The notes under the pieces: generated by a model | The model's database searches: none | The model's input: only the letters and a program-made list of their open reading frames with translations | What the model was told of the DNA's origin: nothing | Translations under genes and position numbers: made by a program | Shown here: positions 16,601-48,700 of the stretch, in pieces | How positions within the stretch are numbered: position 1 is the stretch's first letter | Layout: the number at the start of each line of letters is the position of its first letter | Source of the DNA: Macrostomum lignano | Taxonomy: Eukaryota | DNA length: 64,000 nucleotides | Direction of reading: 5' to 3' | NCBI GenBank assembly: GCA_002269645.1 | Contig: NIVC01000292.1 | Coordinates: 186,001 to 250,000, forward strand

Positions 16601-18854
16601 CACATTCAGCGTGAAGCTGCAGCCGAACGCTCGCTTCAGAAACATCGAAGACCCAGCGCACACGATCTTGCCGCCGCACAGGAAGATCTTGCGGTCTGCC
16701 AGGATGTCCGCCTCGTCCATGAACTGCGTGCACAGGATGATGGAGCGGACGCTCTTCTCCTCCTGCAGCAGCTGCCACAGCTGCCGCCTCGACACCGGGT
16801 CCAGTCCGCTCGTTGGCTCGTCGAGGAACACAACGTCCGGGTCGCCCAGCAGAGCCAGGATCGTGCTCACCTTCCTCTTCTGACCGCCGCTCAGGTCGCA
16901 AGACAGCACATCCTCCTTGTCTCCCAGACCGAGTCTCTGCAGCATTCCGCGAGCTCTCTCCAGCTGGCTGGTGTCGCTGGCCGCCCTGCTGACCAGCGTG
17001 ACTCGGATGCACTCCATCACGGTGAGCGAGTCGCAGAGGGCGTCAAACTGCGGACACTTGCTGATCCGACCTCTGAGCGACAGACGGAGCAGCGGGCTCG
17101 TCACCAGACAGCCGCCGATGTGGGCCGTTCCCTCGTCTGGCAGCTCCTCGCCTGTAAGGACCTTGATGAGCGTCGACTTGCCAGCGCCGTTGTGTCCGAT
17201 GAGAGCCGTGATCTGGCCTCGGTAAATGGTGCCTACAACACAATTTGGGAGGCATGTTTACAGGTACAGATATTTTCAACTCGTTAATACTGAGCGACCA
17301 GCTTTGCTACTTACATGATAATTTGTTTAAAACAATCGGAGCTTCGGAGCAGCAAAGGCAGACGTTGCTGTAACTCTTGCTGAGCTCTTCAACAACAACA
17401 ACAGGGTTGAGCCGCATCACAGGCTCGATGTGCGGTTCGCTTTCAGTAGCTTTCTTTGTTCCCACACTTTCATCTCGCAGGTTTCGAGGAAACCAGAACT
17501 CGGCCGTGACTGGGTAGTAGGGCGCCAGGCAGAGTCCGTTGCCAGTCTTCAGAAGAAAGTCTAAGTACACCAGCAGCAGTATTTGAAGCAGAAGAGAAAC
17601 CAAATTGGCTGCCAGAATGTTGGAGAAGCGCAAAGCGTCGTCTTCTCCGATGCTCATTTCAGTCCAAAGCTGCTCAACGGCAGAGTTCATTCGCCCAGCA
17701 ACAAATTCCTTTGCGAACATTGGCGGGAAGAAATACAGCACGTAGGGCGCCTTTTTTGCCAAATAATCGCTGAATGAGAATGCCAAAACAAGGCCGACGT
17801 TAATTTTGATCGCCACGATAGACACAAGCAGCATTGACGGCAGCAGCATCTCCAGAAGCAGCAATAGGGCCGACAGGTTAAGGCTGAAAAGAGTTACAAA
17901 AAAATACATTTGAGCAATGGCTGCGGCTGAATAAAGCCCAGGACACTGCATAGCGTGGGACACCATGAATACTCCGGCGAACACGAGGCACTCGGTGAGC
18001 GTGAAGAGCCAGACAACAAGCCAGTAGGCAGACACGGACAGGCCGCATTGAAACTGCTGCTGCAGGAAGCCCTCAGATTTGAGAATGTGAACGCAGGAAA
18101 CGGTGGAGATGAGCAGGTAAAAAGTCACCCCAAAAGCTGCTAGTGAGACAGTAAAAGGTGTGCCATTTTCAGTGAGCCTGGACAGCTCGCCGCTATTGAT
18201 CCAGTCGGCGCAAACCGAGTTCGGTAGGGATAAATTTTTTCTTCTCTCCGAATTCTCGGCTTGTTGAGGCTTCACCGACTGTCCAAAGTTGTGCACTTCA
18301 AACAGCTGCACGTTTATCGCAGTTTCATTTCGCGGTCTCAAATGTGCTGACTGGACCATGGCCTGGTAGATAAAGGCGCACATGAGATGAGAATTCCCTT
18401 CGTTAAGACAGTCCAGGACGTGTCGCGACTTCTCCGATTTGCTTGAGTACCGCAGATGCGCAACGACTGAGGCATCGGACTGATGAATGAGCCTCTCTCT
18501 GCAGTCGGTCTCCGCTCGGCAGTCCTCGATCCAGCTGCCGTCGCCGCTGGCCAGGATAAGGCTCGACGTCTTTTCCTCGTCCGAACGATCCAACAGGACT
18601 TTCACCTGCGCTGCCGCGAACTCTCGGGTGCCATAGAACACAATTTGGCGTCCATCTCCTGCGGTACGAGTTCGAGGTCGCATGCTCATTTGCCAGGGCA
18701 GCACGTACAGGTTGGAAATCAGCAGCAGGACCGGAACAACAATGAAGACATTCCGCCATGCCTTCAGCTTCAGTAGGAGCAGAAGCAGAAATCCAAACTG
18801 ACGGATGCAGTTTGGAATGCTGGTCGATTGCTTGCACTCGACGCTCGGGGTCAT
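13621..18854 (-). CDS. Full-size ABCA-subfamily ABC transporter, about 1664 aa, 3 exons
   Basis: Exons 18854-17315 (T|GTAAGT), 17232-14112 (ttgtag| ... CG|GTGAGC) and 13954-13621 (ctgcag|), with matching phases. Architecture is TMD-NBD-TMD-NBD. NBD1 has GHNGAGKST, LSGGQKRK and VFLDEPTSG. NBD2 has GANGAGKST, LSAGSKRR, VIDEASTG and TTHSMEE, followed by the ABCA-type HGDAYTL segment. Confidence 0.95.
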
Positions 18855-21697: not shown

Positions 21698-22758
21698 CTA
21701 CCCAGGCACTGTGCCGGCCTCACCGGAGCTCTCCGAAGCCGCAGTCGCCGCGGACCTGCCGTCTGCTGGCTCGTCGGCATCATAGCGCCGCCGCCTGCGC
21801 TGCTCCCTCCAGCCGGCGCAGGTGATGAACTCGCGAAACTTGGGCATGAAGATGAGGTAGAGCAGCGGATTGACGGCGCTGTTGAGGCTGAGCAGGAATG
21901 AGTCCACGCTGTCGAGGGCGCCTCGCCTCTCAATCGGCACTCCAACGGTGAAGAGCAGGAAGCTGATCGAGTCCGTGGCGAACAGGAGGACAAAGGCGCC
22001 GCTGGTGACGCAGGTCATGAGGGTCAGTCGTTTGGTTGGGCCGTCCATTCTGCTGCCGCGGCTGCACATCTCGGCCTGCGTCTTGCTGGAACGCAGGAAC
22101 GTTCGCAGGATCACCAAGTACATGCTGATGGACAGGACTGTTGGCAAAATCCAAAACAGAATCACGTAGCTGATTCCAAAGGCGATCGCCATCTGCTGGT
22201 TTTCTCGGCTAAACTCGCAATGCTTCCACACGCCAGGTTCGGCGGTTGTATTCACTGATGTGCTGTTGCTAAGCAACGGCGAATCGTCCGGTGTCTTCAC
22301 CAGTATCATCGCCAGGAAGCAGAAGGGCACCTGCACAAAGAATGGGGCTGCCAGCACGGCCGCAATGAAGCAGCCCGCAAGCAGGCACTGGTGACTCTTG
22401 TACCAGCTGTGCGCGGAGAGACAGCAGCAGCGCTCAACGGCCAGGCATGCGAGGTTGTAGACACTCATGCACACCAGAGCCCAGTGGAAAATCTCGCTGT
22501 AGGCCAGCTTGCAGTAGGCCTCCCAAATCGAGTCGGGAAGAGACTGCGATGGCAGCGGGAAGAACTCAAAGTACTGAAGGTTAAGAAGATTGAGCAGCAT
22601 CTGGAGCGAGTCGATGACCGCTTGACTGCGAGCAGATGCGAGCAAAGCGGCTTGCCAATCTTGTGCCGGACGCCGAACACCAGAAATGTGATGTTGAGCA
22701 CCAGAGCCGGCACCAGCAGGACGCTGAGAACCACTCGGAGAACGGATGTGGCATCCAT
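21698..22758 (-). pseudogene. Intronless class A (rhodopsin-like) GPCR broken by a 1-nt frameshift near 22630 (pseudogene or assembly error)
   Basis: Frame A (ATG 22758) encodes MDATSVLRVVLSVLLVPALVLNITFLVFGVRHKIGKPLCSHLL. Frame B continues SQAVIDSL (TM2), LAVERC (DRY-like), FWILP (TM5) and NSAVNPLLY (NPxxY). Inserting one base after CTG CTC joins them into a roughly 353-aa 7-TM protein. Confidence 0.8.
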
Positions 22759-24745: not shown

Positions 24746-25350
24746 GAGAAATGCCCGCAGACGAATTGCCCGCCGAGATTTGCCCGCAGGAGATTTGCCC
24801 GTGGAGATTTGCCCGTGGAGATTTGCCCGCCGAGCTTTTCCCGCGGAGATTTGCCCGCAGTGCATTTTGCCCGTGAGCGAATTGCCCGTGGAGATTTGCC
24901 CGCCGAGAATTGCCCGCCGAGATTTGCCCGCAGTGCAATTTTCCCGCGAGTGAATTGCCCGCGAGCGAATTGCCCGCCGAGTTTTTTCCCGCCGAGGTTT
25001 GCCCGCAATCCTTTTTTTGCAGCGCATTTGGCAGCTAGATTCTGTCCATACATTGCTCCCCCAAAATATGCATTTGATATGCAGTTACTATCAAAACGTT
25101 TTGATCGTGTAAATCTCTTTATTAAGATTAACACGTACTAAGCATTGGGAAGGCAATGCAGACAAAATCTGCCGCGTGGCCAAATGCGCTGCAGGAAAAA
25201 GGATTGCGGGCAAATCTCGGCGGGAAAAAACTCGGCGGGCAATTCGCTCGCGGGCAATTCACTCGCGGGAAAATTGCACTGCGGGCAAATCTCGGCGGGC
25301 AATTCTCGGCGGGCAAATCTCGGCGGGCAATTCGTCTGCGGGCAATTCTC
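24746..25350. mobile_element. Foldback/MITE-like element with long inverted arms built from about 14-bp subrepeats
   Basis: The left arm (about 24746-25048, gagaaatgcccgcagacgaattgcccgccgaga...) is the reverse complement of the right arm (about 25160-25350, ...tctcggcgggcaattcgtctgcgggcaattctc). A roughly 110-bp spacer separates them. No clear TSD was found. Confidence 0.8.
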
Positions 25351-25633
25351 ATGGACCCGGAAGTAACTGTCATCTGCTAGTAGGAAGGACATCAATATCC
25401 TTAGTGACGTTTAGTTAGAAAGAATACGATAGAAACATTTAAACAACTGAATTAAGAAAAAGGGCAAAATAAAAAACGACTTTCAAGTGCCACCTGAACA
25501 GGAAACCCCATTTATGTGAAGCCTAAAATTGTTTGGCGAATTTTCCGGAAAACATCGCTCCCATTTAATGGGAAGCATACGAGCTAAAATTTTGAGTGGC
25601 TTGAGAATTTTGCAGTATTCCAGTGCAGAGCTC

Positions 25634-25849
25634 CCATAAATGGGAAGCATGTAGGGCCGGCGAATCCTGCAGTATTCCTGTGCAGAGCTCCCATAAATGT
25701 GAATCCTTTAGGTAATTTTGACTTCACTACAGAGCCTCGGCCAGGACACAATGCAGCAGAAGAGCTCTTATCTTATGTGAGAGCGCGCGCACAAAACGTA
25801 GCGTTATCGTGGGGGCCGCCTGGTCTATAAATACAACAGGGCTGCGCGC
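25634..25849 (+). promoter_or_regulatory. Promoter of the metallothionein-like gene: TATA box, two MRE-like motifs, one CArG box
   Basis: TATAAATA at 25826-25833. TGCGCGC (matches TGCRCNC) at 25843-25849 on + and 25785-25791 on -. CCATAAATGG (CC-W6-GG) at 25634-25643. Confidence 0.6.
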
Positions 25850-25937: not shown

Positions 25938-26255
25938 ATGGAGAAGCCTACCTGCATCAATTGCAAGCGCGATTGCGAGGCCTGCGAGTGCGAGACTTGC
26001 ATCTGCGAGAAATGCGAGTGCGACACCTGCGAGTGCGACTATTGCGAGTGCGACAACTGCGAGTGCGAGACCTGCGACTGCACGGACGGTACCTGCAAGT
26101 GCGGCCAAAGCAAGTGCAGCAATGCCACCTGCAAGAATGCCACGTGCAAGATCAACGACCGTAGGACCTGCGTGTGCAAGACCTGCGTGTGCAAGACCTG
26201 CGTGTGCAAGACCTGCAAGTGCGAGACCTGCGTGTGCTGCAAGACATGCAAGTGA
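25938..26255 (+). CDS. Metallothionein-like Cys-rich protein, 105 aa, 34 Cys, intronless
   Basis: MEKPTCINCKRDCEACECETCICEKCECDTCECDYCECDNCECETCDCTDGTCKCGQSKCSNATCKNATCKINDRRTCVCKTCVCKTCVCKTCKCETCVCCKTCK*. It has 13 CxC motifs, one CC, no His, one aromatic residue and no signal peptide. A TATA box lies about 110 bp upstream. Confidence 0.8.
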   Translation: MEKPTCINCKRDCEACECETCICEKCECDTCECDYCECDNCECETCDCTDGTCKCGQSKCSNATCKNATCKINDRRTCVCKTCVCKTCVCKTCKCETCVCCKTCK

Positions 26256-27792
26256 AGAAACTGGACCGAGAGACCACATGCTACCAGACTTCAGCCTTCC
26301 CGTGACTTGAAACGCTAGGGATCCCCAAATTACTTTAAATATGTATTCCGAGATTTACCTATATAAAAGGACTACAAAGTTATCATATTGTTTTTTTTAT
26401 TCGAGCCTGTTAATAACTCGTCAATACTTCAATAATTTTGACAGATTAAGAACAAATTGATTAAAGACAACAAATAAACTACCAAAAGTAATTATATTAA
26501 AGGGTCTACCTACTGCAAACATACACAGGTCTCATCTTATTAGCTTAATTGATATCGTTTGAAGCTTATGCCCATTTACACATTCAACATCGGCTTACAT
26601 GTACATTATACTCACGTAAATGTGCTCACGATGATGTCGCTAGAGTAATGAATTGAAGGCGACGAGATCTTCGGCGAGGCGGCACCCAACTAATAGTCGT
26701 AGAAGCCGCGGATATTAGAATATATACATTTAGAAGGTTTGCGAAACACTAAGGACCTTACCTTCGTTCCTTCATTTTTGTTCTGGGAAGATAGAAGTCG
26801 GTTAATTTTGGCTTGTTCTGGCTTCTGCTGAATAAACGCTCGCTTTTTACTACTTGCGCAGTCAATAGCGACGTTAATTATATATTTTCCTAAATTTCCA
26901 ATAATCTAAAAAACCAAGTTTTGGGGTTCGTTCTTTCTTCTATAAAGCTCTGCTGCTTCCTAAATGACTAGCTGAACGACCTTCTGCGCCGTGATCGGTG
27001 GTTCGAGACTTCGAGTTGGCAGCGAATTTTCCGCGCTGAGCCATACCACCCACAGCCCGATGTATAACATGCTGTTGCTAATGCTGCAGCTACTCTTCCA
27101 ACGAGGACAGACAGAGGGTTACACCTGCCTCCCGGGCTCTGTCTCACTATGACGCATGACGGCGATGTGACCTATAATAGATACTTTCTCATCCAGGCCT
27201 GGTGTCATGCCACTCTGATTTTCAGAATAATTGTTGAGTATCAACTTACTTGGTTTCGATTTTTCACGATTGGATACTCCAAATATCTAATTAACGTCTG
27301 ACTCATCAATCCTCCCGTTTGACCCATTGGACTAAATTTTAAAGTTATGCATAGAGAAATTAGGTGGTTGAAGAACTACAGAACGTTCCAATTGACAAAG
27401 TTTTTCGTCGAAAAATCGAATTTTCATAATCAAAATTTTAAACTCAACTAAAGCAAGCATCCAGATCTTCAATGGTGCGAGTTTTAGTCAATTTCAGTTT
27501 TCGCGTCTAGTTATAACAAAAACACAATTAGGCACGTGTTCAAATTCGCAACCATACAACATTTTTTATAACTTAATGATAAATTCTAATACATCATGCT
27601 TATGTTGATTATTATAAAAATGATATTAAAAAAGCTCACTTACTATCATACCATATCATACCATCGTTTTAGGGGCTGCTCTGGACCTGTATTGTATTTT
27701 TTTGTGTTGGTAAATTAGTGTAATATTAAATTAGTGTAGCCTAACTTTAATCCACTAAATTTTGGACAATTGCCATAGTGTGGATCATGCTA

Positions 27793-28246: not shown

Positions 28247-29867
28247 ACATGATCTACACTATGGGACAATTGGTCTATTGGCATCCAACAGTTGTTCTAC
28301 TAACTGCAAGTCCTTGCTCTGTTTAAGGTATTATGATTATATTTTATAATTTAGGTTCATAGGTAATACATTGTATCATAGATAGGCTTATCATTACTCC
28401 TTAGTTTTAAAAGGCCATCTAATACTAATATACATAATAGGCCTAGTCTATTTATATCTAAGCTGGGCCTCCTTACCCTCCTAAACAAGATTAGGTCTAA
28501 GCTAGCCTATATAAGACATAATTCTAATTTCTAACAAATAGCCAAACATAGTATAATAGGCTCTTATTAATTAATTTAATATTAGGCTACATAGTTAAAT
28601 TGTGTTTTATATATTTGAATTCATATCATAAACCAATTATAATACATACCTATTATAGTCTATACCTTATGCCTGTGGCTATACCCATGGTCTATTTATT
28701 TGATTATTTTCCATTTGCAATTATCTAATATTAAATAATTCAAGTTTAAACAAGTTATAATAAATAAAATTATAATTATTAGAATCAACAGATTCAAATC
28801 ATATGTATTGTTTTGTTTCATTAATTCAATAGGCCTATTTGCTTTTCAACTAGGCTTGGGCCTATACTAATATAGTCTATATTATATACTTAAAGCTATA
28901 TTATAAATAGGCTTTTTATGTTATCTAGATAAATTTATAGCATTTAAAGTTATGCTTTTTTGATATCATATAAATTAAAAAGCAAATATAAATATGGATT
29001 TTACTATATGAATAATGAATATTGATATTGTTTTAGCAAAAGGTATTATGACTAGTCTTAAAATAGTAGAATTTTTAGTTTTTTTATATATTAATAATAT
29101 TTAAACTAAAGATTCTTCTTACAAATGATAATTTAAATTAAAAAAATAAGAAAATAAAATTTATATATTTCCATCTAGCTAGGCCTATAGCCAATAAGCT
29201 ATAAATCAAATCAAATATCATTTAAAAACATGAAATAGTTTTATCTTGATTAGATCTGGTAGCTAAATAATATATTTAAGTATTTTGTTCCTTATCTTTT
29301 TATATAGACTAGATTATACTAATAATCTAGTATAATCTAGTCTAGACTTGTTATTAATCTAATATAAGTACAAAAAGCAATTTATTACTTAATAGAATAA
29401 ATAGTTAATAAAACCAAAAGTTTTATTCCTTTTACCATGTGTTGATTTTCTTAGTTTTTTGTTATATTTAGAATATACATATCAATTTTTAAAAAAAATT
29501 TACTAGGCCATCTTATTAGTAACTAATAGGTTAATATGAGCATAAATTAATCATATTATGACAGCTTCATACCTAAATAGCAACTTGAATTTGCATTGTC
29601 AATAGATTAAAAATGGTTAAATGATTCTAAAACTTATATAGTGCATAGTTGTCGTCTTAAACCTAAAGCTTAATGTTCTCAATATCAGTACCACTCTTAA
29701 TTTATAGAATTTATTTAGTATATTTGGCTGTATGAACTAGTTGACCACTTGGGCATGCATATGAGGAAGCATTGGCATCCATTGTGCTTGACTATTGTCA
29801 CTTTTGGTACCTGAGAATTTTCCCTTTGATACTTCACAACACCGATGACCTTCAGGCGGCCCAGTCC

Positions 29868-32580
29868 ATGTTCGTGGTGCTGGTGCACCCCAGCCTGAAG
29901 CTGTTCGTCCGCGCCCTCAACTCCCTTGCTCGGCTGGGCGACGAGCTCTACCTGGAGTTCGACACTACCGGAGTCCTGGCCAAGACCGTCAACTCCGGCC
30001 GCTCCGCCTACGCCGAGTTCGCCTTCCAGCCCGAGTTCTTCCACCGCCACTGCCTGGCTGACGCCTCCGACCGGCCCGAGGAGTCGCTGCGCTGCAAAAT
30101 TCCCGTCAAAGCCTACAGGCAGACGTTTCGGTCGCTGGGCCACATCGACCGGTCTGTGGAGCGGTGCCGCATCGAGCTGGACGGACCGGCCAGGCGGCTT
30201 ACGGTGGGTGCTTCTCGCATGCAGATAACCCGATGAAAACGATTCCTAGGCTAAGAAAGCGTCCCAGAGTCACCTGCATCGCCGCAGAGTCGTTGCAGGT
30301 AGCGTAGCTAAATTTCCGAGAAGTGACTCTAAAACGACAAGATGTCACGGTACAAGTTGCCAAAAGAGTCGCCTGAGAGCCAAGTTGAGAGGTTTGATTG
30401 CCTGCGACTCCGAAACGAATTTGGAACGACTCTGGGGCTACTTGAGCTAGTAAAACGAATTTGGAACGACTCTGGGGCTGCTTGAGCTAGTAAAACGAAT
30501 TTGGAACGACTCTGGGGCTACTTGATCTGGTAAAACGAATTTGGAACGACTCTGGGGCTACTTGAGCTAGTAAAACGAATTTGGAACGACTCTGGGGCTA
30601 CTTGAGCTAGTAAAACGAATTTGGAACGACTCTGGGGCTACTTGAGCTAGTAAAACGAATTTGGAACGACTCTGGGGCTACTTGAGCTAGTAAAACGAAT
30701 TTGGAACGACTCTGGGGCTACTTGAGCTAGTAAAACGAATTTGGAACGGGGGCTACTTGAGCTAGTAGAAAGTTAACCGCTAACACAGTAAACTCGTGGA
30801 CCATTTTTTATGCGACTCTTACGATTCTGCAACTCGCGTGAGGCGCTCGTGACTCAACTGTCGCCTCTCTGTCGCATTGCAGTCGTTTGAGTCACACCAG
30901 AGTCGATAGAGTCACCAGTGAGTTGTTTGCTATGAATCTTTAGCGATTCTTGTCACGGTAACGTTTTCAAGGGGTAATCCGAAATTTACCACTAATCTTG
31001 TCCGGTTTTTATCCCGCTAATGATGGCCTTGTACTAACCGCGGCCAGCTCTGCTTAACTTGGAACCCCGGCGCCTATCGCAGGTGCAATTCCAGTGCCGC
31101 ATGGGCATCAGCAAGCTGCACCAGCTGTACGTGCTGGAGTGCGAGTGCCTGCAGGCGGTGGTCCCGCTGCCAACCGGCCGCTTCACCCGCCTGTCCATCC
31201 GGCCGAAGCTGCTGGCCGACCTGGTGATGCAGAATTTCCAGACCTCCCAGGAGGAGCTGACGGTGACCTGCCAGCCCCGGGCCTGCGTCATCTGCAGCTA
31301 CTGCGACAACGGCGTGCCGGCTGCCGGCTCCGTGCAGACCTCGCTCAGCCTTCGGCCGGACGAGTTTCACGAATACCGGCCGTCCGGGTCCAAGGGTGTC
31401 ACCTTCTGCCAGCGGGAGCTCCGCTGCCTCCTCATGTTTGGCGACTGGCAGGTGCGACCTTGTCTCGTTTGCAGGATCCGCTGTTAGAACCCGCCCTCTC
31501 TATTAGAATCCACCCTCTCTTTTAGAATCCGCCCTCTATATTAGAACCCGCCCTCTCTTTTAGAATCCGCCCTCTATATTAGAACCCGCCCTCTCTTTTA
31601 GAATCCTCCCACTCTATTAAAATCAGCCCTCTCTATAAGAATCCACCCTCTCTATTAGAATCCGCCTACTCTATTAGAATCCGCCCCTGTTAGTATCCGT
31701 CCCCTGTTAGAGTCCACCCCTATTAAAATCCACCTCTGATCCAAAATCCACCCTCTATTAGGATCCGCCCCTCCTTATTAGAATCCGCCCCAGCACGCCG
31801 ATCTCCAATGAGCCGTCGCCCCCACCAAACTCCCAGGCGCCGGCCTCGTTCCCCCTGGAGATCGAATTCGAGCGGCCCGGCCGCCCTGTCCAGTTCCACT
31901 ACCACTGCCCGGAGATGGCTTTTGAAGGCCGCTACGTGCTGTCCACCCTGGCCGAGCCTCAGTCGGCCTCCGCGACCGGCCGCAGCGCCGGGCCGATCTC
32001 GGACACCGAGTCCGAGCTGACGGCCGACCCCGGCTCCCAGCTGACCGTCACGACATCGTCCCTGACGGACGGACCTTCGAGCCGGCGGCAGCGCCACCAG
32101 CCAGCCAGCCGGAATCAGAAGCGGCCGGCCGCCGCGCTTCTGTCGCCTTCGCCGACTTCCCGAGCCTCTCAGAGCAGCAGCGGCCCCCGATCCGCGGTGC
32201 TGGAGAATCTGCCGCCACCGGCGCCGCGACAGCCTGCCGCCTTCGCCGAGGAGGAGGAGGAAGATGACGAAGGCGACGAGACCATCGGCCCGGAGGAGGT
32301 GGCGGCGGCGGCGGCGGCCTCTGCGTCGTCCCGCGGAGGCCGCAAGCCGCTGCTGTCGATGCTGCAGGCCGATTCGCCAGAGCAGCAGCCGGACAGTCCG
32401 GCCAGTGACGCCCAGCAGCAGCCGCTGTGGTCGCCGCACTCGCCCGTCTTCGGCGGACCTCCGCCTGGCCGATTTGCCGACCGCCGGGCCGCCGGCGGCT
32501 GTCGCGAGCGGCAGAGGCGGCCGCCGGCTCCACTGTCGACCTCTCGAATTCTGGTGCCAGACTCGGACGGCGAGGACTGA
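29868..32580 (+). CDS. RAD9: Cell cycle checkpoint protein RAD9 (9-1-1 clamp subunit), about 482 aa, 3 exons
   Basis: Exons 29868-30203, 31083-31451 and 31837-32580. The exon 3 acceptor was chosen for phase compatibility and is less certain. Motifs LARLGDELYLE, TVNSGRSAYAEF, LRCKI, VTFCQRELR, EFERPGRP and YVLSTL match RAD9. The C-terminus ILVPDSDGED* resembles the human RAD9A S387 TopBP1-binding tail. Confidence 0.95.
30409..30775. repeat. 40-bp minisatellite in RAD9 intron 1, about 9 copies
   Basis: Unit gtaaaacgaatttggaacgactctggggctacttgagcta with period 40. Confidence 0.95.
31480..31790. repeat. Degenerate 19-23-bp minisatellite in RAD9 intron 2
   Basis: tattagaatccgccctctc variants. 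Confidence 0.85.
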
Positions 32581-32904: not shown

Positions 32905-34510
32905 CACCACCCCAATCACAGTGCCACCCTCCAATCACAGTGCCACCCCCCAATCACAGTGCCACCCTCCAACCACAGTGCCACCCCCAATCACAGTGCC
33001 ACCACCCCAATCACAGTGCCAGCCCCCAATCACAGTGCCAGCCCCCCCCAATCACAGTGCCAGCCACCCAATCACAGTGCCAGCCCCCCCCCAATCACAG
33101 TGCCAGCCACCCAATCACAGCCCCCCAATCACAGTGCCACCCTCCAATCACAGTGCCACCCTCCAACCACAGTGCCACCCTCCAATCACAGTGCCAGCCA
33201 CCCAATCACAGTGCCACCCTCCAACCACAGTGCCACCCTCCAACCACAGTGCCACCCCCAATCACAGTGCCACCCCCCAATCACAGTGCCAGCCCCCAAT
33301 CACAGTGCCAGCCCCCCCCCCAATCACAGTGCCAGCCACCCAATCACAGTGCCAGCCCCCCCCAATCACAGTGCCAGCCACCCAATCACAGCCCCCCAAT
33401 CACAGTGCCAGCCACCAATCACAGTGCCAGCCCCCAATCACAGTGCCAGCCCCCAATCACAGTGCCAGCCCCCCCCCCAATCACAGTGCCAGCCACCCAA
33501 TCACAGTGCCAGCCCCCCCCCCAATCACAGTGCCAGCCACCCAATCACAGCCCCCCAATCACAGTGCCAGCCACCCAATTACAGTGCCACCCTCCAACCA
33601 CAGTGCCACCCTCCAATCACAGTGCCACCCCCAATCACAGTGCCACCCCCAATCACAGTGCCACCCCCAATCACAGTGCCACCCCCAATCACAGTGCCAC
33701 CCCCAATCACAGTGCCACCCCCAATCACAGTGCCACCCCCAATCACAATGCCAGCCACCCAATCACAGTGCCACCCCCCAATCACAATGCCAGCCACCCA
33801 ATCACAGTGCCACCCCCAATCACAGTGCCAGCCACCCAATCACAGTGCCAGCCACCCAATCACAGTGCTACCCTCCAATCACAATGCCACCCCCCCCAAT
33901 CACAGTGCCACCACCCAATCACAGTGCCACTACCCAATCACAGTGCCAGCCCCCAGTCACAGTGCCACTACCCAATCACAGTGCCACCCCCAATCACAGT
34001 GCCACCCCCCAATCACAGTGCCGCCCCCCAATCACAATGCCAGCCACCCAATCACAGTGCCACCCCCAATCACAGTGCCAGCCACCCAATCACAGTGCCA
34101 GCCCCAATCACAGTGCCAGCCACCCAATCACAGTGCCAGCCACCCAATCAAAGTGCCACCACCCAATCACAGTGCCACCCCCCCAATCACAGTGCCACCC
34201 CCCAATCACAGTGCCACTACCCAATCACAGTGCCACCCCCAATCACAGTGCCACCCCCCAATCACAGTGCCAGCCACCCAATCACAGTGCCACTACCCAA
34301 TCACAGTGCCACCCCCAATCACAGTGCCAGCCACCCAATCACAATGCCAGCCACCCAATCACAATGCCAGCCACCCAATCACAGTGCCAGCCACCCAATC
34401 ACAGTGCCACCACCCAATCACAGTGCCACTACCCAATCACAGTGCCACTACCCAATCACAGTGCCAGCCCCAATCACAGTGCCAGCCCCAATCACAGTGC
34501 CAGCCCCCAA
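32905..34510. repeat. 1.6-kb 18-24-bp minisatellite (ccaatcacagtgcc core) between RAD9 and RIC8
   Basis: Directly visible. It is the source of the PITVPP and QSQCH ORFs. Confidence 0.95.
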
Positions 34511-34626
34511 TCTCGGTGCCATTCCTGTCGAATAAGCCGCAGATAGTGGCAGCTTCGCCAGGCGCCACTACTAACAGTAGCATGTAAAAAACTCGCTCTG
34601 CTGCATGTTGCAGCCCTATCGACGCC

Positions 34627-36955
34627 ATGACCAGCCAACCGCTGCAGCTGCCCCTGTCGGATCCTCCGGCACCGGACGCTGATCCGGCCACCGTGGCCGC
34701 CGCCTTCTCGGCCTCTGAGCAGAAGCTGTCCGAATTCTCATTTAAACAGTTTAGCAATTTCCGGCCAGCCCTGGCCGAGCCGGAAGCGGACATTGGCCGG
34801 CTGTTGGCCCACCTGAGCCGGCCGGATCTGCCAACCGGCCTGGCCGTCCTCTGCCTTCGCTGCCTTCGCCTGCTGTGCCGCCATCGGCCCAACCTGGAAG
34901 CCTGCGACCCCGCCAGGTTCCTGGAGGCCGGCCTCGCCTGCCTGCTTGACCGAAGCGGCCTAGCCGACCTGGCCGATGGCGGCAAAGCTGAGCCGCAGCA
35001 GCGACCTGTCGAGGAGGTGACGGAGAGCCTGATGTGCCTGTGCAACCTCGGCATCCAGCTGGACGGCCTGGTGCAGCGGCTTGTCGACCTTCGCTGTCCA
35101 GCGGCGCTGCTCCGCCGGGCCGCCGGCCTCACCGCCGAGAGCCTCGAGCTGGACTGGCCGGCCTTCGACCTTCGCCTGCTGTTCCTGCTGGCCGCCAAGT
35201 GTCCGGCTGCCCGGCAGGACCTCCGGCTGCATCGCCGAGGCGTCGCTCAGCTCACCCAGCTGCTGCAGCTGGCCAGCGAGCCTCCGCTGCTCTCCGACAA
35301 GAGGTGCGACCTGCTTGGCGACCTGGTCAAAGTTCTCTACACACTGGCTGCCGGCACTGCGGGGCCCGGCGATAAAGACGATTCTTTGGTGAGCCACTCT
35401 TGGAGCTTTGCTCACAGTCTTTGTCTCAGTCCTTGTTCTTCGTATTTGTTCATAATGCTTGTTATTAGTCCTTTTTCTTAGTCTTTGTTCTTAGTCCTTG
35501 TTGTTAGTCGTTGTTCTTAGTCTTTATTCTTAGTCTTTGTTCTTAGTCCTTGTTCTTAGTCCTTGTTCTTAGTCTTTGTCTTAGTCTTTATCTTAATCCT
35601 TGTTGTTAGTCCTTGTTGTTAGTCCTTGTTGTTAGTATTTGTTGTTAGTCCTTGTTCTTAGTCCTTGTTCTTAGTCCTTGTTCTTAGTCCTTCTTAGTCC
35701 TGCCCCTCCTTGCAATCGCTTCCAGGCCGAGGGCGAGGAGACCGCCTTCCATCAGCTGGCGGGACTGCTGCGCCGTCTCCTGCTGGCTGACTGCACCAGC
35801 CCAGACAGACGGGACCGCCTCACCCAGCACTGCGTCAGCCTGCTGCTCTGCCTGCCGCGGGACAGCTTCGACCGCCTGCTTAGCGAGGACGTCCCAGCCG
35901 CCGCTTCTTCAGCAGCGTCGACAGCGTCCAACTTTGAAGGCAAAGGCGTTGAAGCCATCGATGTTGTGCTGAACCTGCTGGACACTCGGCTGGCTCTGTT
36001 CTCGGCCTCGTGCACCGCCGACCCGGCCGCCGTCGCTGCCGTCCTGCCGGCGGGGGTCAGCCTGACTGGCGGCGCCTTGGAGAACCTAGTGCCGGTGCTG
36101 TCCGCCCTGTTCGAGGCCTGCCGGTCTTCGCGGACCATTCGGCGATACTGCAAGCACCGGCTGCTGCCCAGGCGGAGCTCCGATCAGATGGCCCAGCTGC
36201 CCGAGGAAGGTCAGCAGGTCTCCTGATTGCTGACCCACCTGTGTGATTGATGACCCATCTGTGTGATTGCTGACCTACCTGTGTGATTGCTGACCCACCT
36301 GTGTGATTGCTGACCCACCTGTGTGATTACTGACCCACCTGTGTGATTACTGACCCACCTGTGTGATTACTGACCCACCTGTGTGATTGCTGACCCACTT
36401 TTGCGATTGCTGACCTACCTGTGTGATTACTGACCCACCTGTGTGATTACTGACCCACCTGTGTGATTGCTGATACATATCAGATTCTTGACCTACCAGT
36501 GCAGTCTATGACCCAGTTGTCCCATCGCTAACCAAGTTCACCTTGCTAACCAATTTGCCTGGTTTATCTCTGCTCAAAATTTGCAATAGTGAGTACTGCA
36601 GCTCCCACCATTCCCGCGCAGGCGCCTCCATGCGCAGCCGCCTGTGCCGCACGCTGACGCACCCGTGCACCCAGGCTGCCGACATGGCCGCCTCGCTGGT
36701 GCACGCGCTGTGCAAGGCCAGCATCGCCAGGGCTGTCCGCCACACCGGCTACGGCAACTTCGCCGGCTTCCTGGCCCGCCGCGGCCTTCTGGCTGCCGGT
36801 CCGTCGGCTGGGGACTCAACGGTGTACAGCTCCGACTCCTCCGGAGACGGCGAGGACGAGGACGAGGATGATGGAGCGGGGGCTGCCGATCAACAGGGCG
36901 GCGCGGCGGACGGAGACAAGGCAAACGGAGGTAGGCAGACATAGGCAGACAGACT

Positions 36956-42764: not shown

Positions 42765-45700
42765 GATTTATGAGAATTCTTGTGAGATTTAAGAATTCTT
42801 TTGAGATTTATGAGAACTATTGTGAGATTTATGAGAATTCTTGTGAGATTTATGAGAATTCTTGTGAGATTTATGAGAATTCTTGTGAGATTTATGAGAA
42901 TTCTTGTGAGATTTATGAGATGCTTGTGAGATTTAAGAATTCTTTTGAGATTTATGAGATGCTTGGGAGATTTATGAGAGTTCTTGTGAGATTTATGAGA
43001 ATTCTTGTGAGATTTATGAGAATTCTTGTGAGATTTATGAGAATTCTTGTGAGAATTAGAAGAAATCTTGTGTGATTTATGAGAATCCCTGTGAGAATTA
43101 TGAGAGTTCTTGTGAGATTTATGAGAATTCTTGTGTGATTTATGAGAATTCTTGTGTGATTTATGAGAATTCTTGTGAGATTTATGAGAATTCTTGTGAG
43201 ATTTATGAGAATTCTTGTGTGATTTATGAGAATTCTTGTGTGATTTATGAGAATTCTTGTGAGATTTATGAGAATTATTGTGTTATTTATGAGAATTCTT
43301 GTGTGATTTATGAGAATCCCTGTGAGATTTATGAGAGTTCTTGTGACATTTATGAGAATTCTTGTGAGATTTATGAGAATTCTTGTGAGATTTATGAGAT
43401 TCTTGTGAGATTTATAAGAATTCTTGTGAGATTTATGAGAATTGTTGTGTGATTTATGAGAATTCTTGTGTGATTTATGAGAATCCCTGTGAGATTTATG
43501 AGAATTCTTGTAAGATTTATGAGAATTCTTGGTTGATTAATGAGAATTCTTGTGAGATTTATGAGAATTATTGTGAGATTTATGAGAATTCTTGTGCGAT
43601 TTACATGTATGAGAATTCTTTGTTTATTTATGAGAATTCTGGTAGATTTATGAGAATTCTTGTGTGATTTATGAGAATTCTTGTGAGATTTATGAGAAGT
43701 CTTGTGAGATTTGAGAATTCTTTTGAGATTTATGAGAATCCTTGTGTGATTTATGAGAATTCTTGTGAGATTTATGAGAATTCTTGTGCGATTTACATGT
43801 ATGAGAATTATTTGTTTATTTATGAGAATTCTGGGAGATTTATGAGAATTCTTGTGTGATTTATGAGAATTCTTGTGTGATTTATGGGAATTCTTGTGAG
43901 ATTTATGAGAATTCTTGTGAGATTTATGGAATTCTTGTGTGATTTATGAGAATTCTTGTGAGATTTATGAGAATTATTGTGTTATTTATGAGAATTCTTG
44001 TGTGATTTATGAGAATCCCTGTGAGATTTATGAGAATTCTTGTGAGATTTAGAAGAATTCTTGTGATTTATGAGAATCCCTGTGAGATTTATGAGAATTC
44101 TTGGTTGATTTATGAGAATTCTTGTGAGATTTATGAGAATTCTTGTGTGATTTATGAGAATCCCTGTGAGATTTATGAGAATTCTTGGTTGATTTATGAG
44201 AATTCTTGTGAGATTTATGAGATTCTTGTGAGATTTATAAGAATTCTTGTGAGATTTATGAGAATTCTTGGTTGATTAATGAGAATTCTTGTGAGATTTA
44301 TGAGAATTCTTGTGAGATTTATGAGAATTCTTGGTTGATTTATGAGAATTCTTGTGAGATTTATGAGAATTCTTGTGCGATTTGTGAGATTTATGAGATT
44401 CTTGTGAGATTTGAGAATTCTTTTGAGATTTATGAGAATCCTTGTGTGATTTATGAGAATTCTTGTGAGATTTATGAGAATTCTTGTTCGATTTACATGT
44501 ATGAGAATTCTTTGTTTATTTATGAGAATTCTGGGAGATTTATGAGAATTCTTGTGTGATTTATGAGAATTCTTGTGTGATTTATGGGAATTCTTGTGAG
44601 ATTTTTGAGAATTCTTGTGAGATTTATGAGAATTCTTGTGTGATTTATGAGAATTCTTGTGAGATTTATGAGAATTCCTGGTTGATTTATGAGAATTCTT
44701 AGGAGATTTATGAGAATTCTTGTGAGATTTAAGAGAATTATTGTGAGATTTATAAGATGCTTGTGAGATTTATGAGAATTCTTGTTGAAATTTATGAGAA
44801 TTCTTTTGAGATTAATGAGAATCCTTGTGAGATTTATGAGATGCTTGTGTGATTTATGAGAATTCTTGGGAGATTTATGAGAATTCTTGTGAGATTTATG
44901 AGAATTCTTGTGAGATTTATGAGAATTCTTGTGAGATTTATGAGATGCTTGTGAGATTTAAGAATTCTTTTGAGATTTATGAGATGCTTGGGAGATTTAT
45001 GAGAGTTCTTGTGAGATTTATGAGAATTCTTGTGAGATTTATGAGAATTCTTGTGAGATTTATGAGAATTCTTGTGAGAATTAGAAGAAATCTTGTGTGA
45101 TTTATGAGAATCCCTGTGAGAATTATGAGAGTTCTTGTGAGATTTATGAGAATTCTTGTGTGATTTATGAGAATTCTTGTGTGATTTATGAGAATCCCTG
45201 TGAGATTTATGAGAGTTCTTGTGACATTTATGAGAATTCTTGTGAGATTTATGAGAATTCTTGTGAGATTTATGAGATTCTTGTGAGATTTATAAGAATT
45301 CTTGTGAGATTTATGAGAATTGTTGTGTGATTTATGAGAATTCTTGTGTGATTTATGAGAATCCCTGTGAGATTTATGAGAATTCTTGTAAGATTTATGA
45401 GAATTCTTGGTTGATTAATGAGAATTCTTGTGAGATTTATGAGAATTATTGTGAGATTTATGAGAATTCTTGTGCGATTTACATGTATGAGAATTCTTTG
45501 TTTATTTATGAGAATTCTGGTAGATTTATGAGAATTCTTGTGTGATTTATGAGAATTCTTGTGAGATTTATGAGAAGTCTTGTGAGATTTGAGAATTCTT
45601 TTGAGATTTATGAGAATCCTTGTGTGATTTATGAGAATTCTTGTGAGATTTATGAGAATTCTTGTGCGATTTACATGTATGAGAATTATTTGTTTATTTA

Positions 45701-48700
45701 TGAGAATTCTGGGAGATTTATGAGAATTCTTGTGTGATTTATGAGAATTCTTGTGTGATTTATGGGAATTCTTGTGAGATTTATGAGAATTCTTGTGAGA
45801 TTTATGGGAATTCTTGTGTGATTTATGAGAATTCTTGTGAGATTTATGAGAATTATTGTGTTATTTATGAGAATTCTTGTGTGATTTATGAGAATCCCTG
45901 TGAGATTTATGAGAATTCTTGTGAGATTTAGAAGAATTCTTGTGATTTATGAGAATCCCTGTGAGATTTATGAGAATTCTTGGTTGATTTATGAGAATTC
46001 TTGTGAGATTTATGAGAATTCTTGTGTGATTTATGAGAATCCCTGTGAGATTTATGAGAATTCTTGGTTGATTTATGAGAATTCTTGTGAGATTTATGAG
46101 ATTCTTGTGAGATTTATGAGAATTCTTGTGAGATTTATGAGAAGTCTTGTGAGATTTGAGAATTCTTTTGAGATTTATGAGAATCCTTGTGTGATTTATG
46201 AGAATTCTTGTGAGATTTATGAGAATTCTTGTGCGATTTACATGTATGAGAATTATTTGTTTATTTATGAGAATTCTGGGAGATTTATGAGAATTCTTGT
46301 GTGATTTATGAGAATTCTTGTGTGATTTATGGAATTCTTGTGAGATTTATGAGAATTCTTGTGAGATTTATGGGAATTCTTGTGTGATTTATGAGAATTC
46401 TTGTGAGATTTATGAGAATTATTGTGTTATTTATGAGAATTCTTGTGTGATTTATGAGAATCCCTGTGAGATTTATGAGAATTCTTGTGAGATTTAGAAG
46501 AATTCTTGTGATTTATGAGAATCCCTGTGAGATTTATGAGAATTCTTGGTTGATTTATGAGAATTCTTGTGAGATTTATGAGAATTCTTGTGTGATTTAT
46601 GAGAATCCCTGTGAGATTTATGAGAATTCTTGGTTGATTTATGAGAATTCTTGTGAGATTTATGAGATTCTTGTGAGATTTATAAGAATTCTTGTGAGAT
46701 TTATGAGAATTCTTGGTTGATTAATGAGAATTCTTGTGAGATTTATGAGAATTCTTGTGAGATTTATGAGAATTCTTGGTTGATTTATGAGAATTCTTGT
46801 GAGATTTATGAGAATTCTTGTGCGATTTGTGAGATTTATGAGATTCTTGTGAGATTTCTGAGAATACTTGTGTGATTTATGGGAATTCTTGTGAGATTTA
46901 TGAGAAGTCTTGTGAGATTTGAGAATTCTTTTGAGATTTATGAGAATCCTTGTGTGATTTATGAGAATTCTTGTGAGATTTATGAGAATTCTTGTTCGAT
47001 TTACATGTATGAGAATTCTTTGTTTATTTATGAGAATTCTGGGAGATTTATGAGAATTCTTGTGTGATTTATGAGAATTCTTGTGTGATTTATGGGAATT
47101 CTTGTGAGATTTTTGAGAATTCTTGTGAGATTTATGAGAATTCTTGTGTGATTTATGAGAATTCTTGTGAGATTTATGAGAATTCCTGGTTGATTTATGA
47201 GAATTCTTAGGAGATTTATGAGAATTCTTGTGAGATTTAAGAGAATTATTGTGAGATTTATAAGATGCTTGTGAGATTTATGAGAATTCTTGTTGAGATT
47301 TATGAGAATTCTTTTGAGATTAATGAGAATCCTTGTGAGATTTATGAGATGCTTGTGTGATTTATGAGAATTCTTGGGAGATTTATGAGAATTCTTGTGA
47401 GATTTATGAGAATTCTTGTGAGATTTATGAGAATTCTTGTGAGATTTATGAGATGCTTGTGAGATTTAAGAATTCTTTTGAGATTTATGAGATGCTTGGG
47501 AGATTTATGAGAGTTCTTGTGAGATTTATGAGAATTCTTGTGAGATTTATGAGAATTCTTGTGAGATTTATGAGAATTCTTGTGAGAATTAGAAGAAATC
47601 TTGTGTGATTTATGAGAATCCCTGTGAGAATTATGAGAGTTCTTGTGAGATTTATGAGAATTCTTGTGTGATTTATGAGAATTCTTGTGTGATTTATGAG
47701 AATCCCTGTGAGATTTATGAGAGTTCTTGTGACATTTATGAGAATTCTTGTGAGATTTATGAGAATTCTTGTGAGATTTATGAGATTCTTGTGAGATTTA
47801 TAAGAATTCTTGTGAGATTTATGAGAATTGTTGTGTGATTTATGAGAATTCTTGTGTGATTTATGAGAATCCCTGTGAGATTTATGAGAATTCTTGTAAG
47901 ATTTATGAGAATTCTTGGTTGATTAATGAGAATTCTTGTGAGATTTATGAGAATTATTGTGAGATTTATGAGAATTCTTGTGCGATTTACATGTATGAGA
48001 ATTCTTTGTTTATTTATGAGAATTCTGGTAGATTTATGAGAATTCTTGTGTGATTTATGAGAATTCTTGTGAGATTTATGAGAAGTCTTGTGAGATTTGA
48101 GAATTCTTTTGAGATTTATGAGAATCCTTGTGTGATTTATGAGAATTCTTGTGAGATTTATGAGAATTCTTGTGCGATTTACATGTATGAGAATTATTTG
48201 TTTATTTATGAGAATTCTGGGAGATTTATGAGAATTCTTGTGTGATTTATGAGAATTCTTGTGTGATTTATGGGAATTCTTGTGAGATTTATGAGAATTC
48301 TTGTGAGATTTATGGGAATTCTTGTGTGATTTATGAGAATTCTTGTGAGATTTATGAGAATTATTGTGTTATTTATGAGAATTCTTGTGTGATTTATGAG
48401 AATCCCTGTGAGATTTATGAGAATTCTTGTGAGATTTAGAAGAATTCTTGTGATTTATGAGAATCCCTGTGAGATTTATGAGAATTCTTGGTTGATTTAT
48501 GAGAATTCTTGTGAGATTTATGAGAATTCTTGTGTGATTTATGAGAATCCCTGTGAGATTTATGAGAATTCTTGGTTGATTTATGAGAATTCTTGTGAGA
48601 TTTATGAGATTCTTGTGAGATTTATAAGAATTCTTGTGAGATTTATGAGAATTCTTGGTTGATTAATGAGAATTCTTGTGAGATTTATGAGAATTCTTGT

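What the first reader, a model, noticed from the sequence alone, without database searches (positions are those of the whole stretch)
25938..26255. Charge-polarised CxCxx pentarepeat metallothionein
Seen: 34 of 105 residues are Cys. An acidic N-terminal block of seven CxCxx units (CECET, CICEK, CECDT, CECDY, CECDN, CECET, CDCTD) is followed by a linker with NATCK repeats and a basic C-terminal block (CVCKT x3, CKCET, CVCCK). The promoter has a TATA box, two TGCRCNC motifs and a CArG box. Established: metallothioneins are small, Cys-rich, aromatic-poor cytosolic metal binders, and TGCRCNC is the MTF-1 element. Inference: a long, internally amplified metallothionein type that does not fit the vertebrate alpha/beta or mollusc patterns I know, possibly with two metal-selective domains.
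Basis: partly seen in the sequence, partly recalled or inferred. Interest (0 to 1): 0.7.

Follow-up and report, generated by a model that had tools for sequence, protein, structure and literature searches.

The report
Repeat-built metallothionein-like gene in a flatworm
A small gene of the flatworm Macrostomum lignano, apparently transcribed, encodes a 105-residue protein that is one-third cysteine and built from 15-base repeats; it looks like a new kind of metal-binding metallothionein, in a phylum whose parasitic members are reported to have none, but its function is untested.

Summary
Window 25938-26255 (+) is an intact ORF of 105 codons with 34 Cys, all TGC. Seventeen Cys lie in an acidic half (residues 13-50, net charge -13) and 17 in a basic half (residues 51-105, net +10). 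Residues 16-105 keep a strict five-residue register.

The window is Macrostomum lignano assembly Mlig_3_7. This ORF is a called gene there, and the deposited annotation was built from RNA-seq transcripts. Repeat units differ at 37 nucleotide positions, none in a Cys codon. Repeat similarity stops at the ORF boundaries. There is no signal peptide and only one aromatic residue.

The protein meets the sequence criteria that metallothionein (MT) researchers use to pick candidates. It matches no Pfam family, no PDB chain and no credible protein among 1.84 billion representatives. A control search showed these databases cannot see Macrostomum relatives, so conservation remains untested.

The promoter reading is weak. 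The TATA box is convincing, but TGCRCNC and CArG occur at chance density in the window.

Best reading, at 0.5: a lineage-specific MT-like metal-thiolate protein that grew by expansion of a 15-bp coding repeat. Rivals are a disulfide-crosslinked structural protein and a young ORF without function. Metal binding, metal induction and domain selectivity are all untested.

The parts
25938..26255 (+). Complete single-exon CDS (105 codons plus TGA) of the Cys-rich protein
   Evidence: Translation. It is a called 105-residue gene in GCA_002269645.1. The start context has G at -3 and G at +4, and there is no upstream ATG between the TATA box and the start.
25983..26087 (+). Acidic array: seven 15-nt units encoding CxCxx (residues 16-50; 14 Cys, rich in E and D)
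   Evidence: TRF reports period 15 with 7.5 copies and 77% matches. The units show 17 differences from consensus, none in the TGC codons.
26088..26168 (+). Linker that keeps the five-residue register (GTCKC GQSKC SNATC KNATC KINDR RT), with a 2-copy NATCK repeat
   Evidence: Register shown. TRF reports 26121-26151, period 15, 93% matches. The two NATCK units differ only by a synonymous ACC/ACG change.
26169..26252 (+). Basic block: CVCKT x3 (45 nt identical at DNA level), CKCET, CVCCK, TCK (residues 78-105; 12 Cys, rich in K)
   Evidence: TRF reports 26165-26237, period 15, 4.9 copies, 91% matches. Units are listed.
25826..25833 (+). TATA box (TATAAATA), 112 nt upstream of the ATG
   Evidence: Six sites in the window against 0.86 expected, and this one has the right orientation and distance. 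That it works as a promoter element is inferred.
25843..25849 (+). TGCGCGC, a match to the MRE core consensus (significance doubtful)
   Evidence: 66 matches in the window against 62.8 expected. Poisson P for two or more in 150 bp is about 0.01.
25785..25791 (-). TGCGCGC on the minus strand, second match to the MRE core consensus (significance doubtful)
25598..25711 (+). 57-bp tandem duplication in the upstream region; the first copy holds the CArG-like CCATAAATGG (25634-25643)
   Evidence: Family D5 (82% identity between copies). CCW6GG occurs 3 times in the window against 4.3 expected.
26473..26478 (+). AATAAA polyadenylation signal candidate, about 220 nt after the stop (ATTAAA also at 26460 and 26496)
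   Evidence: Its use as a polyadenylation signal is inferred.

Best explanation
This is a real, single-exon gene of Macrostomum lignano that is very probably transcribed. It encodes a cytosolic, intrinsically disordered, metallothionein-like protein.

Proposed mechanism (inferred, not shown): the 34 cysteine thiolates, almost all in alternating CxC and CxxC spacing, wrap soft metal ions (Zn, Cd or Cu) into metal-thiolate clusters. By analogy with known M3Cys9 and M4Cys11 clusters, that would be roughly 10-12 divalent ions or more Cu(I). The protein would buffer or detoxify metals.

The gene grew by stepwise tandem expansion of a 15-bp coding unit (TGC-nnn-TGC-nnn-nnn). One sub-array diverged towards Glu/Asp and a younger one towards Lys/Val. 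The result is two halves of 17 Cys each with opposite charge. The basic half resembles ordinary Lys-rich MT domains. The acidic half is unusual. It may add carboxylate ligands or need the basic half to neutralise it, or both; this is speculation.
For: Shown:
- The ORF and its composition.
- It is one of only two called genes in the 10-kb locus L001 of GCA_002269645.1. The deposited annotation was built only from RNA-seq transcripts plus TransDecoder (PMC5730564). A nearby GPCR ORF is not called.
- Nucleotide differences between repeat units avoid the Cys codons completely: 0 of 17 in the contiguous acidic array (P = 1.7e-4) and 0 of 37 overall. The conservation pattern follows the codons of this reading frame.
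- Identical peptide units differ by synonymous Thr changes.
- Repeat similarity is confined to 25965-26256, inside the ORF.
- Codon choice follows the preference of neighbouring genes, more strongly: GC3 is 0.89 against 0.70, and neighbours use TGC for 83% of Cys.
- There is a TATA box at -112, no upstream ATG, and AATAAA downstream.
- There is no hydrophobic N-terminus, and the longest stretch without a charged residue is 6, so the protein is not secreted.
- AlphaFold gives no fold (pLDDT 43.7), as expected for a metal-free MT.
- It meets the published candidate criteria for MTs (PMC13168519).

Established background: MTs are heterogeneous, may have several independent origins, arise de novo often and grow by tandem repeats (PMC13168519, PMC7826182, PMC8476144, PMC8283569).
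Against: - There is no metal-binding, induction or localisation data.
- It has no homologue in any library: Pfam 0 hits at E<=10, PDB 0 hits, word-index search 0 hits, and the exhaustive HMMER search gave one dubious hit. Conservation and purifying selection between species are therefore unshown.
- A control shows those libraries miss Macrostomum proteins, so this absence is uninformative rather than negative.
- The acidic half (net -13), once metal-thiolate clusters add further negative charge, would be far more negative than typical MT domains.
- Gly and Pro, common in MT turns, are nearly absent (2 Gly, 1 Pro).
- MRE-like motifs are at chance density.
- The window is 42% tandem repeats, so repeat-derived ORFs are common here, and every frame of this array stays open over long stretches (ORFs of 41-116 aa).
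Confidence: 0.5

Rival explanations
1. It is an intracellular structural or self-assembling Cys-rich protein. The acidic block of one molecule would pair with the basic block of another, and the assembly would then be locked by disulfides. That would be functionally like ultra-high-sulfur keratin-associated proteins or Cys-rich sperm structural proteins. Candidate sites are the intracellularly formed stylet, sperm or eggshell material of this hermaphroditic worm.
For: It has 32% Cys, a pentapeptide periodicity and no signal peptide, features shared with keratin-associated proteins (general knowledge). The strict charge polarity suits head-to-tail electrostatic assembly better than it suits a typical MT domain.
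Against: The protein has only one CC doublet and almost no Pro, Gly or Ser, unlike keratin-associated proteins. Nearly all Cys are in CxC or CxxC spacing, the chelating geometry typical of MTs. It is very hydrophilic and rich in Lys, Thr, Glu and Asp. No tissue expression data were available to me.
Confidence: 0.2
2. It is a young, repeat-derived ORF without an established function. A 15-bp minisatellite next to a promoter is transcribed and happens to be open in the Cys frame. Any peptide made is neutral or barely selected.
For: Tandem repeats fill 42% of the window, and many give long spurious ORFs. Every frame across this array stays open over long stretches, including a 116-aa ORF on the minus strand. 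The 45-nt perfect triplication shows very recent expansion. No homologue was found. The only database 'relative', P0001, looks like a non-coding repeat that reads as CECxx.
Against: Differences between units avoid the Cys codons completely and follow the codon structure of this frame. The repeat ends exactly at the ORF boundaries. Cys enrichment extends into the non-array N-terminus and the linker. Charged residues are sorted into two blocks rather than scattered. Codon choice is strongly in the preferred direction. The start context, the TATA box and the gene call on this strand all fit a real gene.
Confidence: 0.2
3. It has some other Cys-dependent role, for example as a redox or thiol buffer, or as a protein with a zinc-cluster interaction module of the kind found in CXC/tesmin or pre-SET domains, rather than as a bulk metal store.
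For: The dense CxC motifs also occur in Zn3Cys9-type CXC domains (general knowledge). The basic half could bind nucleic acids.
Against: No Pfam CXC, pre-SET or zinc-finger family was hit even at E<=10. There is no non-repeat domain that could carry another function.
Confidence: 0.1

Closest known systems
Modular or repeat-expanded animal metallothioneins (Oikopleura dioica OdiMT2, multi-domain mollusc MTs, tunicate MTs; PMC8283569, PMC7826182, PMC9781358, PMC8476144)
   Same: They are small to mid-size, hydrophilic, 20-30% or more Cys, with CxC motifs and few aromatic residues. They grew by tandem internal duplication, and large forms exceed 100 aa. They are lineage-specific and lack homology across phyla.
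   Different: Their repeat unit is a whole 9-12-Cys domain of about 30-40 residues, not a 5-residue (15-nt) unit. No sequence similarity was detectable here. None is described with one strongly acidic and one strongly basic half, to my knowledge.
De novo emerged MTs or MT domains (spider MT2/MT3, limpet gamma domain; PMC13168519, PMC10235030)
   Same: They have no ancestor among other MT families and are proposed to arise easily, because a chelator needs only enough Cys in a short peptide.
   Different: For those cases the source sequence 'remains unknown', and short ORFs in long non-coding RNAs are the published hypothesis. Here the source is visible as a 15-bp tandem array in a genome that is rich in minisatellites. 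Their metal binding was shown experimentally; here it is not.
Ciliate (Tetrahymena) Cu-metallothioneins with reiterated CKC-containing units (recalled from memory, not tested here)
   Same: They are long, internally repetitive and Lys-rich with CxC units. This resembles the basic half (CVCKTCVCKTCKCETC).
   Different: They come from an unrelated organism. There is no Pfam hit to any MT family, and they have no acidic half.
Ultra-high-sulfur keratin-associated proteins (functional analogue for the structural rival; recalled from memory)
   Same: They are cytosolic, more than 30% Cys, and have a pentapeptide periodicity.
   Different: Keratin-associated proteins use CC doublets with Pro, Ser, Gln or Gly. 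This protein uses CxC with Glu, Asp, Lys and Thr.

Membership tests
Metallothionein (operational class definition used in the field; PMC13168519) | High Cys content (typically 20-30%) | tested here: met
   34 of 105 residues, or 32%.
Metallothionein (operational class definition) | Cys arranged in CxC, CC or CCC (and CxxC) motifs | tested here: met
   Thirteen CxCxx units. The gaps between successive Cys are almost all 1 or 2 residues. There is one CC.
Metallothionein (operational class definition) | Few aromatic residues, small size, and a short (3-10 aa) N-terminal stretch before the first Cys | tested here: met
   One Tyr and no Phe, Trp or His. The mass is 11.6 kDa, at the upper end for the class. 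Five residues (MEKPT) precede the first Cys.
Metallothionein (operational class definition) | Cytosolic, with no signal peptide or membrane segment | tested here: met
   The highest mean Kyte-Doolittle value in any 9-residue window of the N-terminus is 0.96. The longest run without a charged residue is 6. No dedicated signal-peptide predictor was run.
Metallothionein (operational class definition) | Binds several metal ions in metal-thiolate clusters | not testable with these tools
   This needs recombinant protein with ESI-MS, CD or UV spectroscopy.
Metallothionein (operational class definition) | [quoted passage not shown] | tested here: inconclusive
   It is a called gene in an assembly whose deposited annotation is RNA-seq-based. 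I could not see read counts or strand information.
Any sequence-defined MT family (Pfam MT families; MTs with solved structures) | Significant profile or sequence similarity | tested here: not met
   Pfam gave 0 families at E<=10. PDB chains gave 0 at E<=10. It should not be filed in any existing MT family.
MTF-1/MRE-regulated metallothionein genes | Functional MRE (TGCRCNC) clusters upstream, and MTF-1 present in the organism | tested here: inconclusive
   Two core matches lie within 65 bp around the TATA box, but the motif is at chance density in the window (66 against 62.8). Poisson P is about 0.002 to 0.04 depending on the interval chosen afterwards. Presence of MTF-1 in flatworms could not be tested, and no literature was found.
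Keratin-associated-protein-like structural Cys-rich proteins | CC-containing pentapeptide repeats rich in Pro, Ser or Gly | tested here: not met
   One CC, 1 Pro, 2 Gly and 2 Ser.

The most novel reading that the evidence does not exclude
A new metallothionein family arose de novo in the Macrostomum lineage from a 15-bp minisatellite that reads as CxCxx. It has since been shaped by selection into two complementary 17-Cys halves, one acidic and one basic, that act together. This would be the first sequence-defined MT candidate I could find for flatworms, whose parasitic members are reported to lack MT genes (PMC3561135). It would also be a concrete example of where new MT sequences come from, which the field calls unknown (PMC13168519).
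Probability: 0.3. Interest if true: 0.65.

Novelty: new variant of a known kind. Interest (0 to 1): 0.45.

Why it matters
[quoted passage not shown] For planarians, the one review I checked cites MT only as a marker that rises on metal exposure and gives no sequence (PMC13253666). A sequence-defined MT candidate in the genetically tractable flatworm M. lignano, where transgenesis is established (PMC5730564) and RNAi is in use (general knowledge), would allow direct tests of how flatworms handle metals.

It would also give MT evolution a worked example. A chelating protein would be seen assembling itself from a 15-bp coding repeat in a genome that is 15% tandem repeats (PMC5730564). The array is still visible at the DNA level, and an older acidic block sits next to a younger basic block.

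If it instead proves to be a structural protein or a functionless ORF, it is a caution against calling MTs from cysteine content alone in repeat-rich genomes.

Tried and rejected
- **Homology searches.**
  - The word-index search of 5.8 billion proteins found nothing.
  - Exhaustive HMMER against 1.84 billion representatives gave one hit, P0001 (E = 6.5e-5).
- **P0001 rejected as a homologue.** It comes from a 964-bp JGI metagenome contig. Its CECxx stretch is a 15-nt DNA repeat, fragments of that repeat also lie outside the ORF, and the rest of the 'protein' is not Cys-rich.
- **Control search.** The Rad9 exon ORF from the same window hits Pfam Rad9 at 9e-19 but finds nothing in the protein database. 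The databases therefore do not cover Macrostomum. 'No homologue' cannot be read as 'orphan', and paralogues in this neopolyploid genome could not be looked for.
- **Exact-sequence look-ups.** The sequence is not in the clustered collection. It occurs on one contig only in the encoding index.
- **Family and structure look-ups.** Pfam and PDB sequences gave nothing.
- **AlphaFold2.** The single-sequence model had pLDDT 43.7, too poor for a fold search, so none was run.
- **Other copies in the window.** tblastn and a scan for Cys-dense stretches found none. The other Cys-dense frames lie in unrelated repeats.
- **Literature.**
  - No paper contains any of six peptide strings from the protein.
  - No paper links Macrostomum or flatworms to a characterised MT.
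  - No paper links MTF-1 to flatworms.
- **Contamination.** I considered a ciliate origin, because ciliate MTs have CKC repeats and ciliates parasitise flatworms. I rejected it because the gene lies inside a 910-kb M. lignano scaffold between ordinary metazoan genes.
- **Hidden upstream exon with a signal peptide.** This is unlikely, because the annotated product is exactly the 105-aa ORF and a TATA box lies 112 nt upstream.
- **Rfam scan of the window.** It gave no matches.

Full report
**1. What is there**

Window 25938-26255 (+) is an uninterrupted ORF of 105 codons plus TGA. It translates to MEKPTCINCKRDCEACECETCICEKCECDTCECDYCECDNCECETCDCTDGTCKCGQSKCSNATCKNATCKINDRRTCVCKTCVCKTCVCKTCKCETCVCCKTCK.

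It has 34 Cys (32%), all encoded by TGC. It has one Tyr and no His, Phe, Trp or Leu.

The charge polarity is real.
- Residues 13-50 carry net charge -13, and residues 51-105 carry +10.
- Residues 1-50 have pI 4.05, and residues 51-105 have pI 8.97.
- Each of those halves holds exactly 17 Cys.

From residue 16 to the C-terminus the protein stays in one five-residue register, including the 'linker' (GTCKC GQSKC SNATC KNATC KINDR RTCVC ...). Tandem Repeats Finder independently reports period-15 arrays at three places:

| Array | Copies | Matches |
|---|---|---|
| 25969-26081 | 7.5 | 77% |
| 26121-26151 | 2.1 | 93% |
| 26165-26237 | 4.9 | 91% |

The three CVCKT units are identical at the DNA level.

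**2. Where it comes from**

An exact look-up places the ORF on NIVC01000292.1 of GCA_002269645.1, a 910-kb scaffold. Several papers cite that accession for the Macrostomum lignano genome. Wudarski et al. 2017 deposited the annotated Mlig_3_7 assembly as NIVC00000000 (PMC5730564).

Neighbouring ORFs are ordinary metazoan genes:
- an ABCA-like transporter at 14108-18854 (-);
- a rhodopsin-type GPCR at 21698-22645 (-);
- Rad9 from 29772 (+);
- Ric8/synembryn at 34627-36226 (+).

Tandem repeats cover 42% of the window. This fits a genome described as 15% simple and tandem repeats.

**3. Is it a gene or just a repeat that happens to be open?**

This is the main technical worry. In this window minisatellites produce many long spurious ORFs. 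Every frame across this array stays open over long stretches, including a 116-aa ORF on the minus strand.

Six observations favour a real coding gene in the Cys frame.

(a) The ORF is one of only two called genes in the 10-kb locus L001, with exactly 105 residues. The deposited annotation was derived from RNA-seq transcript assemblies plus TransDecoder, not from ab initio prediction. The nearby GPCR ORF, though long and with a Pfam hit, is not called. I infer that the gene list reflects that annotation. I could not see read depth or strand.

(b) Among the seven contiguous acidic units, 17 nucleotide differences from consensus all fall outside the six Cys-codon positions (P = 1.7e-4 if placed uniformly). 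Across all 13 CxCxx units the count is 37 differences and 0 in Cys codons. The second figure is partly circular, because those units were chosen by their CxC pattern. The conserved and variable positions follow the codon structure of this frame.

(c) Identical peptide units differ by synonymous changes: CECET uses ACT or ACC, and NATCK uses ACC or ACG.

(d) Similarity to the 15-nt unit is confined to 25965-26256, entirely inside the ORF, with none in the flanks. The ORF is not a random stretch of a longer satellite.

(e) Cys enrichment continues in the non-array N-terminus (3 Cys in 15 residues) and in the linker.

(f) Codon choice follows the preference of neighbouring genes, more strongly. 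GC3 is 0.89 against 0.70, and the neighbours use TGC for 83% of their Cys codons.

Sequence signals around the ORF also fit a simple transcription unit:
- TATAAATA lies 112 nt upstream, and the motif is rare in the window (6 sites against 0.86 expected).
- There is no upstream ATG between it and the start, and the start has G at -3 and G at +4.
- AATAAA lies about 220 nt after the stop.

I put the probability that this is a real protein-coding gene at about 0.75.

**4. What it most likely does**

The protein has no hydrophobic N-terminus or membrane segment, and its longest stretch without a charged residue is 6. It should therefore stay in the reducing cytosol.

Nearly every Cys sits in alternating CxC and CxxC spacing, which is the chelating geometry of metallothioneins. 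AlphaFold2 gives no confident fold (mean pLDDT 43.7). That fits a metal-free MT but does not discriminate between readings.

The sequence meets the criteria MT researchers use to nominate candidates: 20-30% Cys in CC, CxC or CCC motifs, few aromatic residues, and a short N-terminal stretch of 3-10 residues, here MEKPT (PMC13168519).

My best explanation is a lineage-specific MT-like protein that binds Zn, Cd or Cu in thiolate clusters. By analogy with M3Cys9 and M4Cys11 clusters, 34 Cys would hold roughly 10-12 divalent ions. That figure is inference, not measurement.

One feature counts against a textbook MT. Metal-thiolate clusters are themselves negatively charged, and MT domains usually carry Lys to compensate (general knowledge). 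A half with net charge -13 is therefore unusual. Either its carboxylates take part in coordination or selectivity, or the basic half folds back to neutralise it, or the polarity serves something else.

**5. The promoter reading**

All the motifs exist where stated, but only the TATA box stands out.

TGCRCNC occurs 66 times in the window against 62.8 expected from shuffles. The two copies near the gene are both TGCGCGC in GC-rich core-promoter sequence, at 25785 (-) and 25843 (+). The latter sits between the TATA box and the presumed transcription start. A Poisson estimate for two or more copies gives 0.002 to 0.04, depending on an interval chosen after the fact.

CCW6GG occurs 3 times against 4.3 expected. 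The one upstream copy lies in the first unit of a 57-bp tandem duplication whose second unit has lost it.

I found no literature on MTF-1 in flatworms, and I could not search the M. lignano proteome. Regulation through MRE and MTF-1 is therefore not supported, though not excluded.

**6. Relatives and novelty**

No Pfam family is hit even at E<=10. No PDB chain is hit, so none of the MTs with solved structures matches. The word-index search found nothing.

The exhaustive HMMER search of 1.84 billion representatives returned one protein, P0001 (E = 6.5e-5). P0001 comes from a 964-bp metagenome contig. There, a 15-nt DNA repeat reads as CECxx for about 40 residues and then runs into unrelated sequence, and fragments of the same DNA motif lie outside the ORF. 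I do not accept it as a homologue.

A control limits what these negatives mean. The Rad9 exon ORF from this window hits Pfam Rad9 at 9e-19, yet it finds nothing in the protein database. These libraries therefore cannot see Macrostomum proteins. M. lignano also has 180 Mb of duplicated blocks that are at least 95% identical, so paralogues may well exist. Conservation is untested rather than absent.

[quoted passage not shown] For planarians, the one review I checked mentions MT only as a marker upregulated under metal exposure (PMC13253666). No paper in the held library contains this sequence or describes a flatworm MT sequence.

The MT field accepts that MTs are heterogeneous with possibly independent origins, that they arise de novo often, and that they grow by tandem repeats. 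[quoted passage not shown] This locus would add a visible source: a 15-bp coding minisatellite.

I class it as a new variant of a known kind. It belongs to the MT functional class by composition but to no existing MT family.

**7. Rivals**

(i) A structural, disulfide-crosslinked or electrostatically self-assembling protein, at 0.2. The pentapeptide periodicity, the lack of a signal peptide and the charge polarity fit. The absence of CC, Pro and Gly motifs and the chelating Cys spacing do not.

(ii) A young, transcribed, repeat-derived ORF without function, at 0.2. The repeat-rich context, the recent 45-nt triplication and the lack of known relatives fit. The codon-specific constraint on Cys, the coincidence of the array with the ORF, and the sorting of charges into blocks argue against it.

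(iii) Another Cys-dependent role, such as a thiol buffer or a zinc-cluster interaction module, at 0.1.

**8. Verdict**

The MT interpretation is plausible and is the best available reading (0.5), but it rests on composition, motif geometry and internal repeat statistics only. The promoter argument should be dropped apart from the TATA box.

The decisive data are listed under next steps: Macrostomum orthologues and paralogues, expression site, metal induction, and metal stoichiometry of the recombinant halves. All of them are ordinary experiments in a laboratory model.

Noticed in passing
window 1-64000 (for example 42765-49535, 10210-12849, 49995-51886, 32905-34521): About 42% of the window lies in tandem arrays. 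They include a 6.8-kb 21-bp satellite, a 2.6-kb AATC microsatellite and many minisatellites with periods of 19-40 bp. Most periods are not multiples of 3, and many create long spurious ORFs in several frames.
   Followed up: partly
window 24867-25016 and 25196-25345: A foldback-like inverted repeat lies about 600 bp upstream of the Cys-rich gene. Its arms are 150 nt long, 95% complementary and 179 nt apart, and they are built from 14-bp subrepeats (TGCCCGCAGAGATT). It may be a foldback or MITE-type element.
   Followed up: partly
window 21698-22645 (-): A 315-aa ORF with a rhodopsin-family 7TM Pfam hit (8e-11) is not among the called genes of the assembly in locus L001, whereas the 105-aa Cys-rich ORF is. 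This would fit an RNA-seq-based annotation that misses unexpressed receptors.
   Followed up: no
window 14108-17104 and 17307-18854 (-): An ABCA-like transporter is encoded in two very long uninterrupted ORFs of 998 and 515 aa (Pfam ABC_tran 3e-34 and ABC2_membrane_3). These are unusually long exons for a genome that averages about 5 introns per gene.
   Followed up: no
L002 565-700 (JGI metagenome 3300031569, contig Ga0307489_10355566): A 15-nt repeat in an anonymous 964-bp environmental contig reads as CECAK/CECDN/CECDK/CECAN. This is the same CxCxx acidic pattern as the flatworm gene. It is probably non-coding repeat DNA, but I could not exclude a first exon of a similar gene in an unknown eukaryote.
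   Followed up: partly
window 25768-25773: TTATCT (reverse complement AGATAA, a GATA-factor consensus) lies about 55 bp upstream of the TATA box. In C. elegans, GATA elements drive gut expression of the metallothionein genes (recalled from memory). This is a single short motif whose significance was not assessed.
   Followed up: no
protein database control (window 29772-30236): The Rad9 exon ORF hits Pfam Rad9 at 9e-19 but finds no protein in the search for homologous proteins. Negative results from that tool therefore carry little weight for this eukaryotic window.
   Followed up: yes
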